Shown here piece after piece: positions 55,424 through 63,177 of a DNA stretch of 64,000 nt. The notes beneath the pieces were generated by a model, which worked only from the letters and a program-made list of their open reading frames with translations, had not been told where the DNA came from and did no database searches. The position numbers and the translations under genes were made by a program. The stretch is taken from IMG/VR virus record IMGVR_UViG_3300034117_002447, positions 1 to 64,000 of that record; one strand, 5' to 3'. Numbering within the stretch: the first letter of the stretch is position 1; every line of letters starts with the position of its first letter.

Positions 55424-55678
55424 CTACTTCCCTACGTATTCTGAAGGCAGATCTGCAGGTTTAAATACTCTACAGAAACCAAAATGGACCCATCGATTAA
55501 GGAAATCTACTGAGTATTCCTGCTTGTCGGTAGTGACCATTCCATTAATTGGATCGCTTGAGCCCTTAATTATAGTTTCATTAGGTTTGTCCTTTCTAGA
55601 AAAGACTATGATATTACCCTTTTTTAAATTTGCCATGTTGATTAAGTTAAGTACCCCAGGAGGGATTCGAACCCCCAT
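55424..55678 (-). CDS. hypothetical protein; true start likely ATG (MANLKKG) at 55636
   Basis: The ORF-track 5' end overlaps tRNA-Arg(ACG). Confidence 0.55.
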   Translation of the reverse strand: MGVRIPPGVLNLINMANLKKGNIIVFSRKDKPNETIIKGSSDPINGMVTTDKQEYSVDFLNRWVHFGFCRVFKPADLPSEYVGK

Positions 55679-55724
55679 CTCACGGTCCGTAGCCGTGTGT
55701 TCTGATCCATTGAACTACCGGGGC
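55652..55724 (-). tRNA. trnR-ACG: tRNA-Arg(ACG)
   Basis: GCCCCGG/CTGGGGT acceptor; CACGG-CT-ACG-GA-CCGTG anticodon arm; TTCGAAT T-loop; no encoded CCA. Confidence 0.93.
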
Positions 55725-55964: not shown

Positions 55965-55988
55965 AGCTATATTGTACTAAATAATTTG

Positions 55989-56062
55989 TAATCCAGGCAG
56001 GACTCGAACCTGCGACCTACCGCTTAGAAGGCGGTTGCTCTATTCCACTGAGCTACTGGACT
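55989..56062 (-). tRNA. trnR-TCT: tRNA-Arg(TCT)
   Basis: AGTCCAG/CTGGATT acceptor; ACCGC-CT-TCT-AA-GCGGT. Confidence 0.93.
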
Positions 56063-56063
56063 A

Positions 56064-56151
56064 TGGCGGAGAGTGGAGGTCTCGATCCCCATTCCCTTTC
56101 GGGAACCGCTCGCTTAGCAGGCGGCGACAACACCTTGTTGCTTCACTCTCC
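56064..56151 (-). tRNA. trnS-GCT: tRNA-Ser(GCT), non-canonical (8/4) fold
   Basis: GGAGAGTG/CACTCTCC 8-bp acceptor, 5-bp D stem, CT-GCT-AA loop, long variable arm, 4-bp T stem with ATCGAGA loop, G73, CCA encoded. Confidence 0.85.
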
Positions 56152-56156
56152 ATTAG

Positions 56157-56237
56157 TACTCCCGGTGGGACTCGAACCCACAAGCATTGCGCACTCGATC
56201 TTAAGCCGAGCGTGTTTACCAGTTTCACCACGGGAGC
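56157..56237 (-). tRNA. trnL-TAA: tRNA-Leu(TAA)
   Basis: GCTCCCG/CGGGAGT acceptor; CTCGG-CT-TAA-GA-TCGAG; variable arm; A73. Confidence 0.93.
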
Positions 56238-56244
56238 ATTTTTG

Positions 56245-56320
56245 TACCTCTGGTGGGATTCGAACCCACAAAATCTCTTGATCCTAAGTCAAGCGGCTTT
56301 ACCAGTTTACCCACAGAGGC
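56245..56320 (-). tRNA. trnL-TAG: tRNA-Leu(TAG) with very short variable region
   Basis: GCCTCTG/CAGAGGT acceptor; CTTGA-CT-TAG-GA-TCAAG; variable region only AGATTTT. Confidence 0.88.
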
Positions 56321-56323
56321 AGT

Positions 56324-56401
56324 TGGGGTAAACGATCGGGATCGAACCGACGACCTCCTGAACCACAATCAGGCGCTCTAACCAACTGAGCTACGTCTAC
56401 C
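56324..56401 (-). tRNA. trnH-GTG: tRNA-His(GTG)
   Basis: G-1 and C73; CCTGA-TT-GTG-GT-TCAGG; CCA encoded. Confidence 0.95.
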
Positions 56402-56416
56402 ATGTAAAAGAACGAG

Positions 56417-56500
56417 CGGAAGAGTGAGGTATCGATCCCCATACCCGAAGGTACCACTAGTTTTCAAGACTAGGTCCAGCGCCAGCTGAATTACTCTTCC
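56417..56500 (-). tRNA. trnS-TGA: tRNA-Ser(TGA), likely (8/4) fold
   Basis: GGAAGAGT/ACTCTTCC; CTAGT-CT-TGA-AA-ACTAG; GTACC-TTCG-GGTAT variable arm; GGGG-ATCGATA-CCTC T arm; G73. Confidence 0.9.
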
Positions 56501-56508
56501 AGTTTTTG

Positions 56509-56578
56509 AGGTCAATGTTGGAATCGAACCAACTCCTCAGATTTTGCAGACCTGACGGCCTCCACGACCAAACTGACC
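56509..56578 (-). tRNA. trnC-GCA: tRNA-Cys(GCA)
   Basis: GGTCAGT/ATTGACC acceptor; CAGGT-CT-GCA-AA-ATCTG; U73; compact D arm. Confidence 0.92.
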
Positions 56579-56580
56579 AA

Positions 56581-56616
56581 AAACAAAAAAGGCTTAAACG
56601 TTAGTCTAAGCCTTTT
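56581..56616 (-). terminator. attenuator-type intrinsic terminator immediately upstream of the tRNA array
   Basis: AAAAGGCTTAGAC-TAAC-GTTTAAGCCTTTTTTGTTT on the minus strand, ending a few nt before tRNA-Cys. Confidence 0.9.
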
Positions 56617-56640
56617 CAGTAGAAGTTTTCTTATCTTACA

Positions 56641-56712
56641 TCACGGCCTAGACACATCGAGACTTAATCTCAACGAACGTAAACAAAGTGAATGTAAGGA
56701 TAATGTTTTCAT
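56641..56712 (-). CDS. leader peptide MKTLSLHSLCLRSLRLSLDVSRP (putative tRNA-operon attenuator peptide)
   Basis: ATG...TGA, 23 aa; codons 4-18 are all Leu/Ser/His/Cys/Arg; the 3' end GTCTAGGCC is complementary to the terminator 5' arm GGCTTAGAC. Confidence 0.8.
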   Translation of the reverse strand: MKTLSLHSLCLRSLRLSLDVSRP

Positions 56713-56717
56713 GTTAA

Positions 56718-56727
56718 TAATATACTA
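56718..56727 (-). promoter_or_regulatory. early-type promoter motif TAGTATATTA driving leader and tRNA array
   Basis: Identical 10-mer at 32605, 52695 and 61987; variants at 11593, 36845, 48266, 49617 and 55970. A late-type ATAAATA is also present at 56747-56753. Confidence 0.7.
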
Positions 56728-56749
56728 CAATATTTCTAATTGGTTTTAT

Positions 56750-58081
56750 TTATTCTTTTCTTTTTGCTAATTTTCTTTTAACTGCTTCCCGAGTCGACTC
56801 CATTTTCTTGGCATAACTTGGATTTTTTCGCTTGTTAAAATTAATTTGTTGATTTAGCGATCCAGTAATCTTTTGCATGTTACCACCTCTTGTTCTGATT
56901 AACCAATCCGCTAATTTATTAACTCCAAGGTCTCTGAATTTTCCATTTGCATCAGGTGCATCAGAATCGTGCCATTTAAGTTTTTTCTTTTCTGAAATTT
57001 CATCTTCATCAGCTTCATCATCTTCTTCGTCATCCCATCTGTGATACTGTTCCTCAATTGCCTTATTTAAAAGATCTTGAATTTTGTCGTACATTCCAAG
57101 CGAGTCTTCGAAACCAGTTACGGCACTCATAAAGAGTTCAATATCTTCAGCTATCTCATTAGACTTCATTGAAACTGGATCTCCATTTTGGAATAGGTCA
57201 GACCATTCATAGTCTTCAAGTTCAGCATCTTCGTAAAGTCCGATATCTTTTTGTGCGACACTAACTGACGACTTAACAGTTTCATCGATAAAGTTTATTC
57301 TGACTTCAAAATCAGTCCATACGTCTCTTTCTATATCCGGATATTCGGATGAATCTATTCCGTAATCATCTATAGATTGATTGAACTGGCCTGAAACAAT
57401 AACGATTTGATCTTCTGCAGTTGCTCCATTGACTAGTTCTGCGATTGCATCAGTGTCAACTCCACCAAAACCCATTGCTCTTAGTTCTGCAGCTTCTTCA
57501 TCAGATAAGTTCTCAATTATGAATTTTCCTTTTGTGTTAGGCTCATCAGAATCATGCCATTTAAGTTTCTTCTTTTCTGATACTTCTCCAAGACGTCTAT
57601 CGATTATGTCATTTACTATATCGACTGCCATGTCTACAAACATGCCTTCGTATTCAATTCGCTGCAAAATCTGAGTTAACTCATCAGCGATTCCTTGAGA
57701 ATCGTGATTTTCTGAATCCAGTTTAAAATCAACTTCATACGCATTACCTGCACCGTCAAAATCAATCCCAGAATTTAAGACTGCCACTTGTACTTTAGAT
57801 TTCATTGTCTCAAAGTCGAAATCAACATAGTACTGAACAAGGAACACGCTATCTAATTCAGCAGCCTCTGCTCTTTCTGGATCAAGTCCTAAATCATCAG
57901 CTGTCATATCAAATCCCAAATCGAAACCTAATGTCGTGTCGGTCTTCTCCTCTGGGTTGTATTCGGCCATTAATCCTTGAATTTCATCCGTGTCAATCTT
58001 TGAATTAAAACCTAATGCTGCTAATTCTTCAGCATCATCAGTATTTTCATTAACGAATTGTGTAAATCGTTTAAGTCTCAT
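56750..58081 (-). CDS. very acidic modular protein, capsid-targeting-like N-terminus
   Basis: LKRFTQFVNE; two acidic domains each preceded by ELxA(L/M)GF and each followed by SEKKKLKWHDSD. Confidence 0.75.
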   Translation of the reverse strand: MRLKRFTQFVNENTDDAEELAALGFNSKIDTDEIQGLMAEYNPEEKTDTTLGFDLGFDMTADDLGLDPERAEAAELDSVFLVQYYVDFDFETMKSKVQVAVLNSGIDFDGAGNAYEVDFKLDSENHDSQGIADELTQILQRIEYEGMFVDMAVDIVNDIIDRRLGEVSEKKKLKWHDSDEPNTKGKFIIENLSDEEAAELRAMGFGGVDTDAIAELVNGATAEDQIVIVSGQFNQSIDDYGIDSSEYPDIERDVWTDFEVRINFIDETVKSSVSVAQKDIGLYEDAELEDYEWSDLFQNGDPVSMKSNEIAEDIELFMSAVTGFEDSLGMYDKIQDLLNKAIEEQYHRWDDEEDDEADEDEISEKKKLKWHDSDAPDANGKFRDLGVNKLADWLIRTRGGNMQKITGSLNQQINFNKRKNPSYAKKMESTREAVKRKLAKRKE

Positions 58082-58669: not shown

Positions 58670-60406
58670 TTATTTATACTCTATTCGCAATCTCGCTTTG
58701 AAGTCAGGTGGGAATTGATCACCTGCGGATTTCATTAGGTCTGCGAAACATCCATCAAGTAGATGAGTCACCGCCCAATCCTCAGGTGTACGTATTGAGC
58801 GGCCTACTCCTTGCAGGACAGCGATTGAGGTCTTCCAATTGTACCATTGCTGGCTGTATTCCAATTTAGCAGCAACGTACTTGTCGCCGAGATGAGGGTA
58901 CGGAACCTTTAAGAAGATTTGGAATCTACTCTGGTCGTCAACCATGTTCAAGCCTTCAAGAATAGATGGACCCATCAGTACCATTGCCTTCTTCTTCTTC
59001 ATTATCTTTAGCGCGATCTCTTTCTCTTCAGATCCTTTATAGAGAACAATGCGTTTCTTAACATCTTTGGGAAGACCTGTCCAGATCTTAGTATTCAATT
59101 CATAAGAACCTGAATGAATGATTCCGGAGTGCTCAGAGTTCTCCCTGACTATTCTGGTTACTGAATCAATTGCCCATTGTAGATTCTCTTGTAGGAATCT
59201 GGTTGACATTTTTTTACCTGGATAGAAAATGATAGGTGACTTCTCCCAATTGAAATGACTTTCAATCTTAAAGTACTTAGCCTTCTTGATTCCGTGATTT
59301 CTCATGAAATCGCTGGGACTGCCCATTGTAGCAGTCATCAGTAACTTGAATCCAAATTTCGTAAAGAAGTGTTTCTGTAATAGGTAGTACTCATCGATAC
59401 AGTTGAATGTGATTGACTTTTCGCCAGGATTCTTTACGAGCTTCTCAAGACCTACTTGTTCAATGATTTTACAATAGTCTTCTAGTTTACAGTGAACGTC
59501 CTTACACCAGTCCGCCATGCCAAAGACAGCCAACCATTCGGATGGAATGCTGCCCTCTAAAAATTCAATTGATGCATTTTCTCTAAGCGAAGAGGTTGCC
59601 TGAACTGCAATGCTCAAGAGTCTAGTAACCTCCTTAAGTAATTTAAGCAAGTTGCCATGATCCTCCTGTTCGTAAATCATATCAATCACTTTTGCTAATC
59701 GTTCAGTGTCCACTTGTGGTATCTTTTGGCCAATATCGCCGGTGCTTTCAATTAAGCTCTCAGTCTTTTTAACAATTTCATGCGAAACGATTGGACTGAA
59801 ATGGCTCTGTACAATATCAAGTAGCTTATGGGCCTCATCGCATACTACAAAATCTCTTTGTGGAAATGGGGAGCCCTTACCGTTGCCTTGCTGATTTTGC
59901 TCAACGTAATTTCGTTGAATCAGGGCGTATGGATAGGTTAACAGAGAGACTGGCGACTTGATTGCCTTTTTTCTTGAGGTCAAGTAGCCACATTGTTTGA
60001 AACACGGAAGAGATTCAGCCTTTTCATAAGAGGTTCCTTTACTCTTGCACTCACCGACTGAAAATTTCTCGTCGTTCACAACGCATCGGTAGTTATCAAC
60101 ACCTTTTATATTACCCCAATTCCATACCTGCAACTTTTTAAAATCTTTGACGTATTGTTCATGAAGAGAGAGGTCAGATGCTAAGATATAGCCGCGATTT
60201 CCCTTAAATGCAAGAAAATCAGCAAATAACATTGCGATAACTGACTTGCCTGATCCAGTCGGCGCATCAAGTAGATAAATTCCATTATGGTCTTCTTCGT
60301 ATGCTGAAATAATATCGATTATCGCTTCTTTTTGCTGAGGTCTAAACTCAATGCTCGGATGTTTACCTTTTATGAACTCTTCAAAGTCCCGTGTGAGTTT
60401 ACTCAT
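58670..60406 (-). CDS. DinG/YoaA-like SF2 helicase
   Basis: FRPQQKE, APTGSGKS, Fe-S-type Cys cluster (RC..EC..C...CGY), DEAH, TATM, EGLN, KVPYP and QGVGR.IR motifs. Confidence 0.9.
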   Translation of the reverse strand: MSKLTRDFEEFIKGKHPSIEFRPQQKEAIIDIISAYEEDHNGIYLLDAPTGSGKSVIAMLFADFLAFKGNRGYILASDLSLHEQYVKDFKKLQVWNWGNIKGVDNYRCVVNDEKFSVGECKSKGTSYEKAESLPCFKQCGYLTSRKKAIKSPVSLLTYPYALIQRNYVEQNQQGNGKGSPFPQRDFVVCDEAHKLLDIVQSHFSPIVSHEIVKKTESLIESTGDIGQKIPQVDTERLAKVIDMIYEQEDHGNLLKLLKEVTRLLSIAVQATSSLRENASIEFLEGSIPSEWLAVFGMADWCKDVHCKLEDYCKIIEQVGLEKLVKNPGEKSITFNCIDEYYLLQKHFFTKFGFKLLMTATMGSPSDFMRNHGIKKAKYFKIESHFNWEKSPIIFYPGKKMSTRFLQENLQWAIDSVTRIVRENSEHSGIIHSGSYELNTKIWTGLPKDVKKRIVLYKGSEEKEIALKIMKKKKAMVLMGPSILEGLNMVDDQSRFQIFLKVPYPHLGDKYVAAKLEYSQQWYNWKTSIAVLQGVGRSIRTPEDWAVTHLLDGCFADLMKSAGDQFPPDFKARLRIEYK

Positions 60407-60783
60407 TTATCGTTGTTATTTTTAGAAGAAACTGCCTGTATCAACAAGCTTGCAGTCGAATAGTTCGTTGCAATAGGAATATTATACACATTACACAATC
60501 TAAGTAACATTTGAACGTCAACTTCATGCGGATGTGCAGTTAATGGATCAATAAAGAAGATAACTCCATCTATTTTACCGTTGACTAACTCTGCTGCGAT
60601 CTGAGCGTCTCCGCCTTGCGGTCCAGACTTCATTCGGTCGACCTCAAGACCTGCATGCTCAATGTGAGTACCGGTCGTACCAGTTGCAACAACCTCGTGC
60701 TGCTTAAAAAAATCAAGACGCTTCATGATGAATGCCACCATGTCCGCCTTTTTATTATCGTGTGCAATTACTGCTATTCTCAT
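60403..60783 (-). CDS. mgsA: methylglyoxal synthase
   Basis: IAHDNKK, ATGTTG, SGPQGGDAQI, DPL..HPHEVDV and PIATN motifs. Confidence 0.95.
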   Translation of the reverse strand: MRIAVIAHDNKKADMVAFIMKRLDFFKQHEVVATGTTGTHIEHAGLEVDRMKSGPQGGDAQIAAELVNGKIDGVIFFIDPLTAHPHEVDVQMLLRLCNVYNIPIATNYSTASLLIQAVSSKNNNDK

Positions 60784-62188: not shown

Positions 62189-62309
62189 TAGTCAGGACAG
62201 GATTCGAACCTGCATGGTCACATCTCTTACCTTTGTTTTCCCCGCTAAGGGAGTGGTGAACGAAGCGAGTTCCGCACCACATAGCGTCTACCAATTCCGC
62301 CACCTGACT
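62189..62309 (-). ncRNA. 121-nt tRNA-like RNA with Leu-type acceptor/D/T arms and a 70-nt insert in place of the anticodon and variable arms
   Basis: AGTCAGG/CCTGACT-A acceptor; GCG-GAATTGGTAGA-CGC D arm; GCAGG-TTCGAAT-CCTGT T arm; no canonical anticodon arm. Confidence 0.75.
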
Positions 62310-62461: not shown

Positions 62462-62542
62462 TGGTACCCTCTGAGAGACTCGAACTCTCACCCTAAGACT
62501 AGATCCTAAGTCTAGCGCGTCTACCAATTCCGCCAAGAGGGC
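62462..62542 (-). tRNA. trnL-TAG: tRNA-Leu(TAG), second copy
   Basis: GCCCTCT/AGAGGGT acceptor; CTAGA-CT-TAG-GA-TCTAG; CCA encoded. Confidence 0.93.
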
Positions 62543-62634: not shown

Positions 62635-63177
62635 TTAGAATGGGCTGATTAACTCTTTAAACGGGGTTCCCAATTGATCTTTATCCGAAATGATAGGATT
62701 TTCAATTTCCCAATCAATCGCTAAGTCCGCATCATTCCATAATATACAGCCTTCATGTTCTTTTGAATAACCGTTTGTGCATTTATAGGAAAAAATAGTG
62801 TCGTCTTCTAGGCTAACGAAGCCATGCGCAAAGCCTGGTGGAATCCAAAGTTGATTGCGATCAGTCGTATTTAATACAACTTGAAAGGATTTACCGTAGC
62901 TTGGAGAGTCTCGACGAATATCTACCGCAACATCCAACACGCTTCCTGTAATTACCTGAACCAATTTTCCTTGATCAAACGGTGGAGCTTGAAAATGCAA
63001 TCCACGAAGGACTCCTTTTTTGGATCTAGATAAATTATCCTGAACAAATGAATGCTCATTAAGAAATTCAGAATATTTCAGCTGATTAAACGATTCTAGA
63101 AAAAATCCTCTTTCATCGCCAAACACGGATGGATAAACTGATATAAGCCCGTTAGGAAATTCTTGTACAACTTTCAT
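62635..63177 (-). CDS. rmlC: dTDP-4-dehydrorhamnose 3,5-epimerase
   Basis: FGDERGFF, VQDNLS.S..GVLRGLHFQ, DVAVDIR, WIPPGFAHGF and YKCT motifs. Confidence 0.95.
   Translation of the reverse strand: MKVVQEFPNGLISVYPSVFGDERGFFLESFNQLKYSEFLNEHSFVQDNLSRSKKGVLRGLHFQAPPFDQGKLVQVITGSVLDVAVDIRRDSPSYGKSFQVVLNTTDRNQLWIPPGFAHGFVSLEDDTIFSYKCTNGYSKEHEGCILWNDADLAIDWEIENPIISDKDQLGTPFKELISPF

What the first reader, a model, noticed from the sequence alone, without database searches (positions are those of the whole stretch)
56581..56727. Leader-peptide attenuator controlling the phage tRNA operon, with codons matching all eight downstream tRNAs
Seen on the minus strand: promoter motif TAGTATATTA (56727-56718), then ATG AAA ACA TTA TCC TTA CAT TCA CTT TGT TTA CGT TCG TTG AGA TTA AGT CTC GAT GTG TCT AGG CCG TGA (56712-56641), then a terminator GGCTTAGAC-TAAC-GTTTAAGCC-TTTTTT, then tRNAs Cys(GCA), Ser(TGA), His(GTG), Leu(TAG), Leu(TAA), Ser(GCT), Arg(TCT) and Arg(ACG). 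Codons 4-18 use only these five amino acids, and every tRNA has a matching codon: TGT, TCA/TCG, CAT, CTT/CTC (by wobble), TTA/TTG, AGT, AGA and CGT. A crude chance estimate is (22/61)^15, about 2e-7, post hoc. The leader's 3' end GTCTAGGCC (56653-56645) forms 9 bp (one G-U) with the terminator 5' arm GGCTTAGAC, a mutually exclusive antiterminator. CTTACAT(T)CAC can also pair with GTGATGTAAG across the stop codon. Established: ribosome-stalling attenuators (trp/his/ilv type) control amino-acid biosynthesis operons, and phage tRNAs can offset host anticodon-nuclease defences. Inference: a ribosome reaching the stop masks the antiterminator and terminates, whereas stalling on any depleted Leu/Ser/His/Cys/Arg tRNA allows read-through. 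That would be a multi-input sensor supplying replacement tRNAs on demand. I know of no description of this for a phage tRNA array. Caveat: stalls at codons 16-18 may still mask the antiterminator.
Basis: partly seen in the sequence, partly recalled or inferred. Interest (0 to 1): 0.95.

Follow-up and report, generated by a model that had tools for sequence, protein, structure and literature searches.

The report
Leader-peptide attenuator gating phage tRNA genes
A 23-codon mini-gene plus a transcription stop signal sits directly before this giant phage's tRNA genes and is built from codons read by those tRNAs; relatives keep the design with mostly matching codon sets, so it probably switches tRNA production on when those tRNAs run short.

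Summary

About 30 distinct homologous leaders were found, all in uncultured huge phages. They fall into three classes, and each lies 61-70 nt before the first tRNA of an array. Five features recur:
- a short ORF;
- a long leader hairpin;
- a segment near the ORF's 3' end complementary to the terminator's 5' arm, although the stem sequence differs between classes;
- a strong terminator;
- a "sensing window" of codons whose amino-acid set matches the tRNA set: 5 types before the 5-amino-acid array, 13-14 before arrays of 13-14 types.

Two phages that lack tRNA-Ile have lost both Ile codons from the leader.

Exceptions: one subgroup keeps Ser codons although no Ser tRNA lies in its array; complementarity is weak in subclass 2b.

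Best reading (about 0.7): a ribosome-mediated transcription attenuator through which tRNA supply regulates tRNA genes. It matches no Rfam family, no GenBank phage and no paper searched. All evidence is computational.

The parts
56742..56753 (-). Conserved upstream motif ATAAATAAAACC. It may be a second, late-type (TATAAATA-like) promoter or an upstream promoter element.
   Evidence: Exact match. It is conserved in all six class 1 variants, including those with a different upstream gene. Related ATAAATAAC motifs lie just before many ATGs in the window. Its function is inferred.
56718..56727 (-). Promoter-like motif TAGTATATTA (-10-like TATATT). The ATG follows 5 nt later, so the transcript may be leaderless.
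   Evidence: There are 4 exact copies against 0.24 expected, all intergenic on the gene strand. The arrangement TAGTAyAwTA + 5 nt + ATG occurs four times, three of them before ORFs of 76-247 codons. L044 has TATAAT + 6 nt + ATG. The transcription start site has not been measured.
56641..56712 (-). Leader ORF of 23 codons plus TGA, encoding MKTLSLHSLCLRSLRLSLDVSRP.
   Evidence: The ORF has the same length in all six class 1 variants. The window and L006 differ by 7 synonymous and 2 non-synonymous codons. Homologous N-termini occur in classes 2 and 3.
56665..56706 (-). Predicted sensing window, codons 3-16. A ribosome stalled here leaves the antiterminator strand free. The run of L/S/H/C/R codons spans codons 4-18 (56703-56659).
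   Evidence: Folding with a ribosome mask (A-site -15 to +14) on the transcript truncated before the terminator's 3' arm. All 8-9 antiterminator pairs form at codons 3-16 in all six variants and are lost from codon 17/18 to the stop.
56636..56697 (-). Leader hairpin (anti-antiterminator, regions 1:2). Outer helix 56697-56688 with 56644-56636. Middle helix 56684-56680 with 56650-56646, which sequesters the antiterminator strand. Apical helix 56673-56667 with 56663-56657.
   Evidence: MFE and centroid structures, z = -5.58. RNAalifold consensus with 6 covarying pairs. 93% of cells are paired in alignment A3. The apical helix is rebuilt from a different sequence in group B.
56645..56653 (-). Antiterminator 5' strand (region 2), GTCTAGGCC, codons 20-23.
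   Evidence: It pairs with 56612-56604. 96% of cells are paired across six variants, and two pairs show compensatory double changes. Duplex energy is -15.0 kcal/mol against -5.9 +/- 1.8 for shuffles.
56585..56612 (-). Intrinsic terminator: 5' arm 56612-56604 (region 3), loop 56603-56600, 3' arm 56599-56591 (region 4), T run 56590-56585.
   Evidence: 100% paired. It ends 6 nt before tRNA-Cys, so tRNA-Cys has no room for a promoter of its own.
56508..56578 (-). tRNA-Cys(GCA)
   Evidence: ARAGORN; Rfam 37.3 bits.
56416..56500 (-). tRNA-Ser(TGA)
   Evidence: ARAGORN at a 90% threshold; Rfam 47.9 bits as tRNA-Sec; alignment to Ser tRNAs of L006/L008.
56324..56400 (-). tRNA-His(GTG)
56244..56320 (-). 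tRNA-Leu(TAG)
56156..56237 (-). tRNA-Leu(TAA)
56064..56151 (-). tRNA-Ser(GCT)
   Evidence: ARAGORN at a 90% threshold; alignment to Ser(GCT) of L006/L008.
55988..56062 (-). tRNA-Arg(TCT)
55651..55724 (-). tRNA-Arg(ACG). It lies downstream of a second promoter-like motif (55979-55970) and a 76-codon ORF (55964-55734), so it may be only partly under the attenuator.

Best explanation
This is a ribosome-mediated (leader-peptide) transcription attenuator, and the genes it gates are tRNA genes.

Proposed sequence of events:
1. Transcription starts at or just before the ATG of a 23-codon leader ORF.
2. If the ribosome moves quickly through the leader, it reaches codons 17 to the stop. There it covers the antiterminator strand (region 2). 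The terminator (regions 3:4) then forms 6 nt before tRNA-Cys, and transcription ends.
3. If the ribosome is slowed anywhere in codons 3-16, it breaks the leader hairpin (1:2) and leaves region 2 free. Region 2 pairs with region 3, the terminator cannot form, and RNA polymerase reads into the tRNA array.

Codons 3-16 consist almost entirely of codons decoded by the tRNAs encoded downstream. The tRNA pool therefore controls its own supply: a shortage of any one of these tRNAs induces the array, and sufficiency shuts it off. This is an OR gate with negative feedback. The shortage could come from a codon-usage mismatch with the host, host shut-off or a tRNA-cleaving defence.

Shown here: the sequence architecture, its conservation and covariation, and the match between leader codon set and tRNA set across three leader classes.
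Inferred: translation of the leader, the transcription start site, coupling of transcription and translation in the unknown (probably Bacteroidota) host, and the physiological trigger.
For: 1. Architecture. The order is promoter-like motif, short ORF, hairpin, antiterminator, terminator, then the first tRNA 6 nt later.

2. Conservation. Six class 1 variants keep a 23-codon ORF. The window and L006 differ by 7 synonymous and 2 non-synonymous codons. Groups A and B differ at 10-13 codons, yet codons 4-18 stay within L/S/H/C/R (one Thr in group B). Cys and Arg swap positions in L044.

3. Antiterminator. 96% of cells are paired, with two compensatory pairs. Classes 1, 2a and 3 have unrelated terminator stems (GGCTTAGAC, CCTCGAGA/CCTCGGGA, CCTCTGACT), and each leader carries the complement near its 3' end. 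Own-arm duplexes average -11.9 kcal/mol against -6.8 for arms of other classes. Between L023 and L033 the pair TCTCGAGGT/ACCTCGAGA becomes TCCCGAGGT/ACCTCGGGA, a compensatory change.

4. Position of the codons. Ribosome-mask folding allows the antiterminator only for A-site codons 3-16 in class 1, 2-20 in class 2 and 2-17 in class 3. These are the stretches holding the matched codons.

5. Codon set against tRNA set. Jaccard is 0.71-1.0 (class 1A), 0.87 (2a), 0.93 (2b) and 0.73-0.77 (class 3). P ranges from 1e-3 to below 2.5e-6. Each class best matches its own array. The L073 window contains all 13 amino-acid types of its proximal array, including W, C, H, M and F, plus one extra type.

6. Covariation events. 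L022 and L078 lack tRNA-Ile and have lost both ATT codons. L078 also lost its AGT codon together with tRNA-Ser(ACT). Subclass 2a has a Val codon and a proximal tRNA-Val; 2b mostly has neither.

7. Translation is plausible without a Shine-Dalgarno sequence. Only 2 of 66 genes in the window have an SD-like motif. Three ordinary ORFs share the same promoter-to-ATG spacing.

8. The phage tRNAs decode the phage's most used codons in these families: TTA, CTA, TCA, AGA.
Against: - There are no expression data. The start site, translation of the ORF and read-through are all inferred.
- Group B (L011, L051) keeps four Ser codons, yet no Ser tRNA lies in its array or within the fetched loci. Its leader matches the group A tRNA set better than its own.
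- Tracking of Thr and Val is imperfect in subclass 2b.
- Antiterminator complementarity in 2b is weak: -6.7 to -8.2 kcal/mol, not significant against shuffles.
- On the truncated transcript the antiterminator is also the equilibrium structure with no ribosome at all. Termination as the default state therefore rests on kinetic assumptions.
- In 2b and class 3 the antiterminator strand is exposed again when the ribosome sits at the stop codon.
- On the full-length window RNA the terminator is always the MFE structure.
- The limits of the sensing window depend on an assumed ribosome footprint, and the "proximal array" cut-offs for class 2 are ad hoc.
- The roughly 30 leaders represent only three deep lineages, so the events are not independent.
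- Three of the 15 window codons (TCC, CTT, CTC) need four-way wobble by a U34 tRNA.
- The order of amino acids in the class 2 core (THTMSFTICSKWA) is highly conserved, which also fits a functional peptide.
Confidence: 0.7

Rival explanations
1. The element is a general translation-capacity sensor, not a tRNA-specific one. The attenuator is real and driven by the ribosome, but it reports overall ribosome speed or availability (host shut-off, ribosome-targeting stress). Its codon make-up only sets the basal rate and was partly inherited.
For: Group B keeps Ser codons without Ser tRNAs in its array. Thr and Val tracking is imperfect in 2b. Any slowing in codons 3-16 would have the same structural effect.
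Against: The set-level match is very specific, including rare W, C, H and M in class 2, and common L, G, N, P and Y are absent from the 2b window. Ile codons and tRNA-Ile were lost together. A general sensor would not need one codon of each type.
Confidence: 0.12
2. The element is a structured non-coding leader or stand-alone small RNA, and the ORF is incidental. A protein or RNA factor, or plain leakiness, governs read-through of the terminator. Alternatively, the roughly 128-nt terminated RNA acts in trans.
For: The RNA structure is strong and conserved (z = -5.6). Many synonymous changes also preserve helices. A promoter followed by a terminator is the anatomy of an sRNA gene. Terminated attenuator RNAs can act in trans, as rnTrpL does (PMC6614838).
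Against: RNA structure alone does not explain several observations. Only one frame is open in about 30 variants from three classes. The amino-acid set of that frame matches the downstream tRNA set. Codon losses follow tRNA losses. The matched codons end where a stalled ribosome would begin to mask the antiterminator.
Confidence: 0.1
3. The ORF encodes a functional micropeptide, and the terminator is a leaky insulator. The tRNAs are expressed by constitutive partial read-through.
For: The N-terminus is conserved at the amino-acid level (MKTLSLH; THTMSFTICSKWA in class 2) while synonymous sites vary.
Against: Within class 1 the peptide sequence is rearranged while its composition is kept: a C/R swap, and 10-13 differences between groups A and B. 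The peptide has no hydrophobic or recognisable motif. This reading does not explain the complementarity to the terminator arm or the match to the tRNA set.
Confidence: 0.06

Closest known systems
Classical leader-peptide transcription attenuators of amino-acid operons (trpL, hisL, pheL, leuL, thrL, ilv; also pheM before pheST)
   Same: A short ORF lies between the promoter and the first gene. There are four pairing regions (1:2, 2:3, 3:4) ending in an intrinsic terminator. The regulatory codons lie where a stalled ribosome frees the antiterminator. Multivalent leaders are known: thr and ilv sense two or three amino acids.
   Different: The controlled genes are tRNAs, not biosynthetic enzymes or synthetases. 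The product that relieves stalling is the tRNA itself. The leader carries roughly one codon for each of 5 to 14 amino-acid types rather than runs of one. The possible leaderless, SD-less start is unusual. It is not a sequence member of any Rfam leader family (His_leader 21.8 against 49 bits; Phe_leader 16.1 against 55 bits).
Leaderless polycysteine short ORFs acting as Cys-responsive attenuators in mycobacteria (bioRxiv 10.1101/834739)
   Same: A short sensory ORF, possibly starting at the 5' end of the transcript. Ribosome pausing on particular codons remodels downstream RNA structure.
   Different: The mycobacterial elements control translation by unmasking a ribosome-binding site, sense one amino acid, and regulate Cys metabolism. 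This element has a transcription terminator, senses several inputs, and regulates tRNA genes.
Regulated tRNA arrays in bacteria: the Anabaena trn operon, induced by translational stress (PMC8421152, PMC10272220)
   Same: An accessory tRNA array is kept off by default and switched on when translation is impaired.
   Different: That operon is controlled by a protein repressor (TrcR). The 2021 paper does not mention a leader, attenuator or terminator.
T-box riboswitches
   Same: A terminator/antiterminator decision that depends on tRNA status.
   Different: A T-box binds uncharged tRNA directly through a specifier codon and the T-box sequence, has no ORF, and controls synthetase and amino-acid genes. 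No Rfam T-box match was found here.

Membership tests
Ribosome-mediated (leader-peptide) transcription attenuator | A short ORF lies in the transcript leader, between the promoter and the first controlled gene. | tested here: met
   A 23-codon ORF at 56712-56641 lies between the TAGTATATTA motif and tRNA-Cys. It is conserved in about 30 variants.
Ribosome-mediated (leader-peptide) transcription attenuator | An intrinsic terminator lies immediately upstream of the controlled genes. | tested here: met
   A 9-bp stem plus T run at 56612-56585, 6 nt before tRNA-Cys. The same arrangement occurs in all classes.
Ribosome-mediated (leader-peptide) transcription attenuator | An antiterminator helix is mutually exclusive with the terminator. 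| tested here: met
   56653-56645 pairs with 56612-56604. 96% of cells are paired, with 2 compensatory pairs. Complementarity is kept across unrelated stems in classes 1, 2a and 3, and is weak in 2b.
Ribosome-mediated (leader-peptide) transcription attenuator | An anti-antiterminator (1:2) pairing overlaps the ORF. | tested here: met
   The leader hairpin sequesters 56650-56646; z = -5.58. On the truncated RNA it is not the equilibrium winner over the antiterminator.
Ribosome-mediated (leader-peptide) transcription attenuator | The regulatory codons relate to the operon's product and lie where a stalled ribosome favours the antiterminator. | tested here: met
   Matched codons lie in codons 4-18, and the antiterminator is permitted at codons 3-16. 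The set match was tested in all classes. The footprint is assumed, not measured.
Ribosome-mediated (leader-peptide) transcription attenuator | The leader is translated, and read-through responds to the availability of charged tRNA. | not testable with these tools
   The phages are uncultured and no expression data are available.
Ribosome-mediated (leader-peptide) transcription attenuator | The controlled genes are amino-acid biosynthesis or aminoacyl-tRNA synthetase genes (true of all described members). | tested here: not met
   The downstream genes are tRNAs. For this reason the element is filed as a new variant, not an ordinary member.
Rfam leader families (His_leader RF00514, Phe_leader RF01859, others) | The covariance-model score reaches the gathering threshold. 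| tested here: not met
   The best scores are 21.8 against 49 bits and 16.1 against 55 bits. Nothing was found at gathering level.
T-box riboswitch | Specifier loop, T-box sequence and no ORF, as captured by the Rfam T-box model. | tested here: not met
   No T-box hit at E-value up to 10.
Leaderless mRNA | The transcript starts at, or within a few nt of, the start codon. | tested here: inconclusive
   The -10-like hexamer is followed by 6 nt and then ATG in the window, in L044 and at three other window genes. The start site has not been measured, and a conserved upstream motif (56753-56742) could give a 5' UTR of roughly 30-40 nt.

The most novel reading that the evidence does not exclude
Huge phages, probably of Bacteroidota hosts, carry a previously undescribed and widespread family of tRNA-array leader peptides. 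Each leader holds roughly one codon for each tRNA species encoded immediately downstream. It acts as a multi-input OR gate that induces the array when any one of those tRNAs becomes limiting and shuts it off once the phage's own tRNAs accumulate. This would be autogenous, demand-matched control of tRNA supply, and could also serve as an alarm for tRNA-cleaving host defences.
Probability: 0.55. Interest if true: 0.92.

Novelty: new variant of a known kind. Interest (0 to 1): 0.88.

Why it matters
How phages regulate their tRNA genes is largely unknown. These genes are usually treated as constitutively co-transcribed cargo.

A leader-peptide attenuator in which the regulated product is the tRNA itself would be:
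- a new use of a textbook mechanism;
- by far the most multivalent attenuator described, with up to about 14 amino-acid inputs;
- a direct, testable link between tRNA availability during infection and phage gene expression.

It also offers a bioinformatic handle. The leader's codon set predicts which tRNAs belong to one transcription unit, and possibly which host tRNAs are limiting or under attack. The compact element of roughly 130 nt could serve as a reporter of tRNA availability in synthetic biology.

Tried and rejected
- Near and distant BLAST of the window region and of a class 2 leader against 50,697 GenBank phages gave only tRNA hits or none. No cultured or annotated relative exists.
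- Rfam gave only sub-threshold hits driven by the terminator.
- PHROGs and Pfam gave no function for the upstream 443-aa protein or for the ORFs around the array.
- The metagenome scan with the class 1 core added only copies of known variants plus chance hits.
- A 36-codon ORF before tRNA-Gly(GCC) in L069 looked like a second leader. It has no terminator and was dropped.
- The promoter motif with one mismatch allowed is not enriched (31 against 35 expected). Only the exact motif is.
- The sigma-70 consensus scan finds no promoter at the leader.
- Seven literature searches found no description of an attenuator before tRNA genes. The library lacks most subscription journals, so this is not proof of absence.
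- Considered and rejected: a type I toxin (the peptide is not hydrophobic) and a degenerate tRNA (no tRNA model hit over the leader).
Full report
WHAT IS THERE. All coordinates are on the minus strand. The window reads as follows:
- TAGTATATTA at 56727-56718, then five bases;
- ATG at 56712, 23 sense codons, and TGA at 56643-56641, encoding MKTLSLHSLCLRSLRLSLDVSRP;
- a 28-nt spacer;
- a stem-loop GGCTTAGAC-TAAC-GTTTAAGCC followed by TTTTTTGTTTTT (56612-56579), also found by the terminator scan;
- tRNA-Cys starting at 56578.

ARAGORN at default settings finds six tRNAs. The two Ser tRNAs appear at a 90% score threshold and align with Ser tRNAs that are called at default settings in relatives. 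The order is Cys(GCA), Ser(TGA), His(GTG), Leu(TAG), Leu(TAA), Ser(GCT), Arg(TCT). Next come a second promoter-like motif (55979-55970) and a 76-codon ORF, and then Arg(ACG). The one qualification is that Arg(ACG) may have its own promoter.

IS IT MORE THAN CHANCE?
- The exact promoter motif occurs four times in the window against 0.24 expected. All four copies are on the gene strand in intergenic positions.
- The arrangement "motif + 5 nt + ATG" recurs before ORFs of 247, 147 and 76 codons.
- Only 2 of 66 long ORFs have an SD-like sequence, so the missing ribosome-binding site is normal for this genome.
- The 128-nt leader RNA folds at -40 kcal/mol against -21.9 +/- 3.2 for shuffles, z = -5.6.
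- A run of 15 or more L/S/H/C/R codons occurs twice in about 128,000 six-frame codons. About 0.014 is expected by my arithmetic from the 0.344 set frequency.

THE GENOME. The window is identical to IMG/VR contigs of about 271 kb. Its helicase is closest to an uncultured huge phage (42% identity) and to the Lak megaphages of Prevotella (about 31%). There is no DNA match to any GenBank phage outside the tRNAs. The lack of SD sequences, together with TAnnTTTG-type promoters in relatives, suggests a Bacteroidota host. That is an inference.

CLOSE RELATIVES (class 1). Protein- and DNA-pattern scans gave six distinct versions of the leader (alignment A3).
- Group A (window, L006, L008, L044) keeps all eight tRNAs.
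- Group B keeps only Cys, His, Leu(TAA) and Arg(TCT) in L011, plus Arg(ACG) in L051.

All six ORFs have 23 codons. The window and L006 differ by 7 synonymous and 2 non-synonymous codons. Groups A and B differ at 10-13 codons, yet codons 4-18 remain L/S/H/C/R, with one Thr in group B. In L044 the Cys and Arg codons have swapped places. Composition is therefore conserved more strongly than sequence, as expected if codon content is what matters.

Partial tracking is visible within class 1. Group B has 0-1 CTN codons in codons 4-18 against 2-4 in group A. L051, which has Arg(ACG), has CGC where L011, which lacks it, has CAC. However, group B keeps four Ser codons with no Ser tRNA in the array or in the fetched loci. 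That is a clear exception.

RNA STRUCTURE.
- The free leader folds into one long hairpin followed by the terminator.
- The middle helix of that hairpin (56684-56680 with 56650-56646) sequesters the antiterminator strand.
- The antiterminator (56653-56645 with 56612-56604) is paired in 96% of cells of A3. Two pairs change on both sides between groups A and B (U-A to C-G, and C-G to U-A). The terminator tolerates the same changes through G-U wobble.
- This is the classical four-region layout: 1:2, 2:3, 3:4.

I then folded the transcript truncated before region 4, with 30 nt masked by a ribosome. The full antiterminator forms when the A-site is at codons 3-16 in all six variants. It is lost from codon 17/18 to the stop.

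THE WIDER FAMILY (key result). Phages that share the same tRNA-Cys inside much larger arrays also carry a short ORF plus terminator directly before the first tRNA of the array. Further scans brought the total to about 30 distinct leaders on contigs of up to 334 kb.
- Class 2 leaders have 29-33 codons and a core THTMSFTICSKWA. They precede arrays of the form Ala-(Ile)-Phe-Lys-(Val/Glu)-Trp-Arg-Cys-His-(Ile)-Met-Thr-Asp-Ser-Glu.
- Class 3 leaders (MRTLTHTLCSQPNQIWIGNFVQLEDTDVG and variants) precede Asn-Gly-Gln-Pro-(Ile)-Trp-Arg-Cys-His-(Ser)-Leu-Glu-Thr-Asp-Arg-Met.
- The N-termini are homologous to the window's (M-x-x-x-S/T-(L)-H).
- Every member has a leader hairpin, a strong terminator, a first tRNA 61-70 nt after the stop codon, and a segment near the ORF's 3' end complementary to the terminator's 5' arm.
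- The terminator stems are unrelated between classes (GGCTTAGAC; CCTCGAGA or CCTCGGGA; CCTCTGACT), and each leader carries the matching complement. Own-arm duplexes average -11.9 kcal/mol against -6.8 for arms of other classes. They are significant against shuffles in classes 1, 2a and 3, but weak in 2b.
- Between L023 and L033 the pair TCTCGAGGT/ACCTCGAGA becomes TCCCGAGGT/ACCTCGGGA.
- The antiterminator-permissive windows are codons 2-20 in class 2 and 2-17 in class 3.

DO LEADER CODONS TRACK THE tRNA SET? Mostly yes. Jaccard similarity between the amino-acid set of the sensing window and that of the (proximal) array:

| Leader | Jaccard | Note |
|---|---|---|
| Class 1B | 0.57 | |
| Class 2a | 0.87 | |
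| Class 2b (L073) | 0.93 | all 13 tRNA amino-acid types present in 19 codons, plus one extra |
| Class 3 | 0.73-0.77 | |

- The probability of reaching these values with random peptides drawn from proteome or six-frame amino-acid frequencies is 1e-3 to below 2.5e-6.
- In the cross-matrix every class matches its own array best: 0.71-0.93 against 0.20-0.61 for other classes. Sub-variants 2b, L031 and L078 also match their own arrays best. Leader 1B is the exception.
- Specific events: L022 and L078 lack tRNA-Ile (Pro and Trp are contiguous), and both ATT codons of the leader have been replaced. L078 also lost the AGT codon together with tRNA-Ser(ACT). Subclass 2a has a Val codon at position 19 and a tRNA-Val between Lys and Trp; 2b mostly has neither.
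- Imperfect cases: Thr and Val in some 2b leaders, and Ser in L022 and in group B.

MECHANISM. The best-supported reading is a ribosome-mediated transcription attenuator controlling tRNA genes.
- A fast ribosome reaches the last third of the ORF, covers region 2, and the terminator forms.
- A ribosome slowed at any codon of the sensing window opens the 1:2 hairpin and leaves region 2 free to pair with region 3, so RNA polymerase reads into the array.
- Because the sensing codons are those decoded by the array's own tRNAs, the products feed back negatively.
- The phage tRNAs decode the phage's favourite codons in these families: TTA 36%, CTA 23%, TCA 35% and AGA 50% of their families. Shortage early in infection is therefore a plausible signal. 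Depletion of tRNAs by host nucleases is an alternative trigger and remains untested.

WEAK POINTS.
- There are no expression data, and the transcription start site is unknown. Two candidates exist: a leaderless start at the ATG, or a start near the conserved ATAAATAAAACC motif at 56753-56742.
- The equilibrium fold of the truncated RNA forms the antiterminator even without a ribosome, so default termination is a kinetic assumption.
- On the full-length window RNA the terminator always wins thermodynamically.
- In 2b and class 3 the antiterminator strand is re-exposed when the ribosome is at the stop codon.
- The ribosome footprint and the "proximal array" limits are my choices.
- Three deep lineages limit statistical independence.
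- Whether transcription and translation are coupled in the host is unknown.

COMPARISON WITH KNOWN SYSTEMS.
- In architecture the element works like the trp/his/pheL attenuators and meets all their testable structural criteria.
- It differs in what it controls (tRNA genes), in carrying about one codon of each of 5-14 amino-acid types, and in the possibly leaderless, SD-less start.
- It is not a member of any Rfam leader family or of the T-box family.
- Leaderless sensory short ORFs are known in mycobacteria, but they act on translation and sense Cys only (10.1101/834739).
- The Anabaena accessory tRNA operon is stress-induced through a protein repressor (PMC10272220), and the 2021 paper on it does not mention attenuation.
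- Seven full-text searches found no description of an attenuator before tRNA genes.

VERDICT. I classify the element as a new variant of a known kind, with high interest.

Noticed in passing
window 62189-62309 (-): A 121-nt tRNA-like element (Rfam tRNA, 34.5 bits) with a long insertion between an apparently normal acceptor/D region and T arm. It could be an intron-containing or otherwise atypical tRNA. ARAGORN does not call it.
   Followed up: no
window 62462-62542 (-): A second tRNA-Leu(TAG), about 5.7 kb upstream of the array. It has its own promoter-like GGGTATAATA and no leader ORF or terminator. The same extra tRNA is present at a similar distance in relatives L025 and L060.
   Followed up: partly
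whole window, for example 39598 (+), 58677, 31430 and 27838 (-): Almost no gene has a Shine-Dalgarno sequence (2 of 66). Many ATGs sit 4-6 nt after a TATAAATAAC-like motif resembling the T4 late promoter, which suggests widespread leaderless or near-leaderless mRNAs in this phage.
   Followed up: partly
window about 3820 (+): The only other long run of L/S/H/C/R codons in the window: 17 codons, RLLLRSLLLRSRLLHLL. It is probably an off-frame reading of a low-complexity coding region and is not next to any tRNA.
   Followed up: no
L008/L039, between tRNA-His and tRNA-Leu(TAG): An insertion of about 700 nt splits the array in this relative: His starts at +226 and Leu(TAG) at +1017, where L006 has them contiguous. 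It could be a mobile ORF such as a homing endonuclease.
   Followed up: no
L031, between tRNA-Gly and tRNA-Gln: A 75-80 nt insert that is not recognised as a tRNA and is absent from L078 and L022.
   Followed up: no
L044, about 1.1 kb downstream of its array: Two further tRNAs, Leu(GAG) and Arg(TCG), again for Leu and Arg. Every tRNA seen in class 1 phages is for L, S, R, H or C, an unusually narrow repertoire.
   Followed up: no
window 62635-63177 and 60403-60783 (-): Auxiliary metabolic-type genes near the array: a dTDP-4-dehydrorhamnose 3,5-epimerase (Pfam E-value 8e-66) and a protein with an MGS-like domain.
   Followed up: no
class 2 loci (for example L026, L069), first tRNA after the leader: The first tRNA, Ala(TGC), is atypical (71 nt) and ARAGORN misses it at the default threshold. 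The window's two Ser tRNAs are missed in the same way. Standard tRNA counts for these phages are therefore underestimates.
   Followed up: partly
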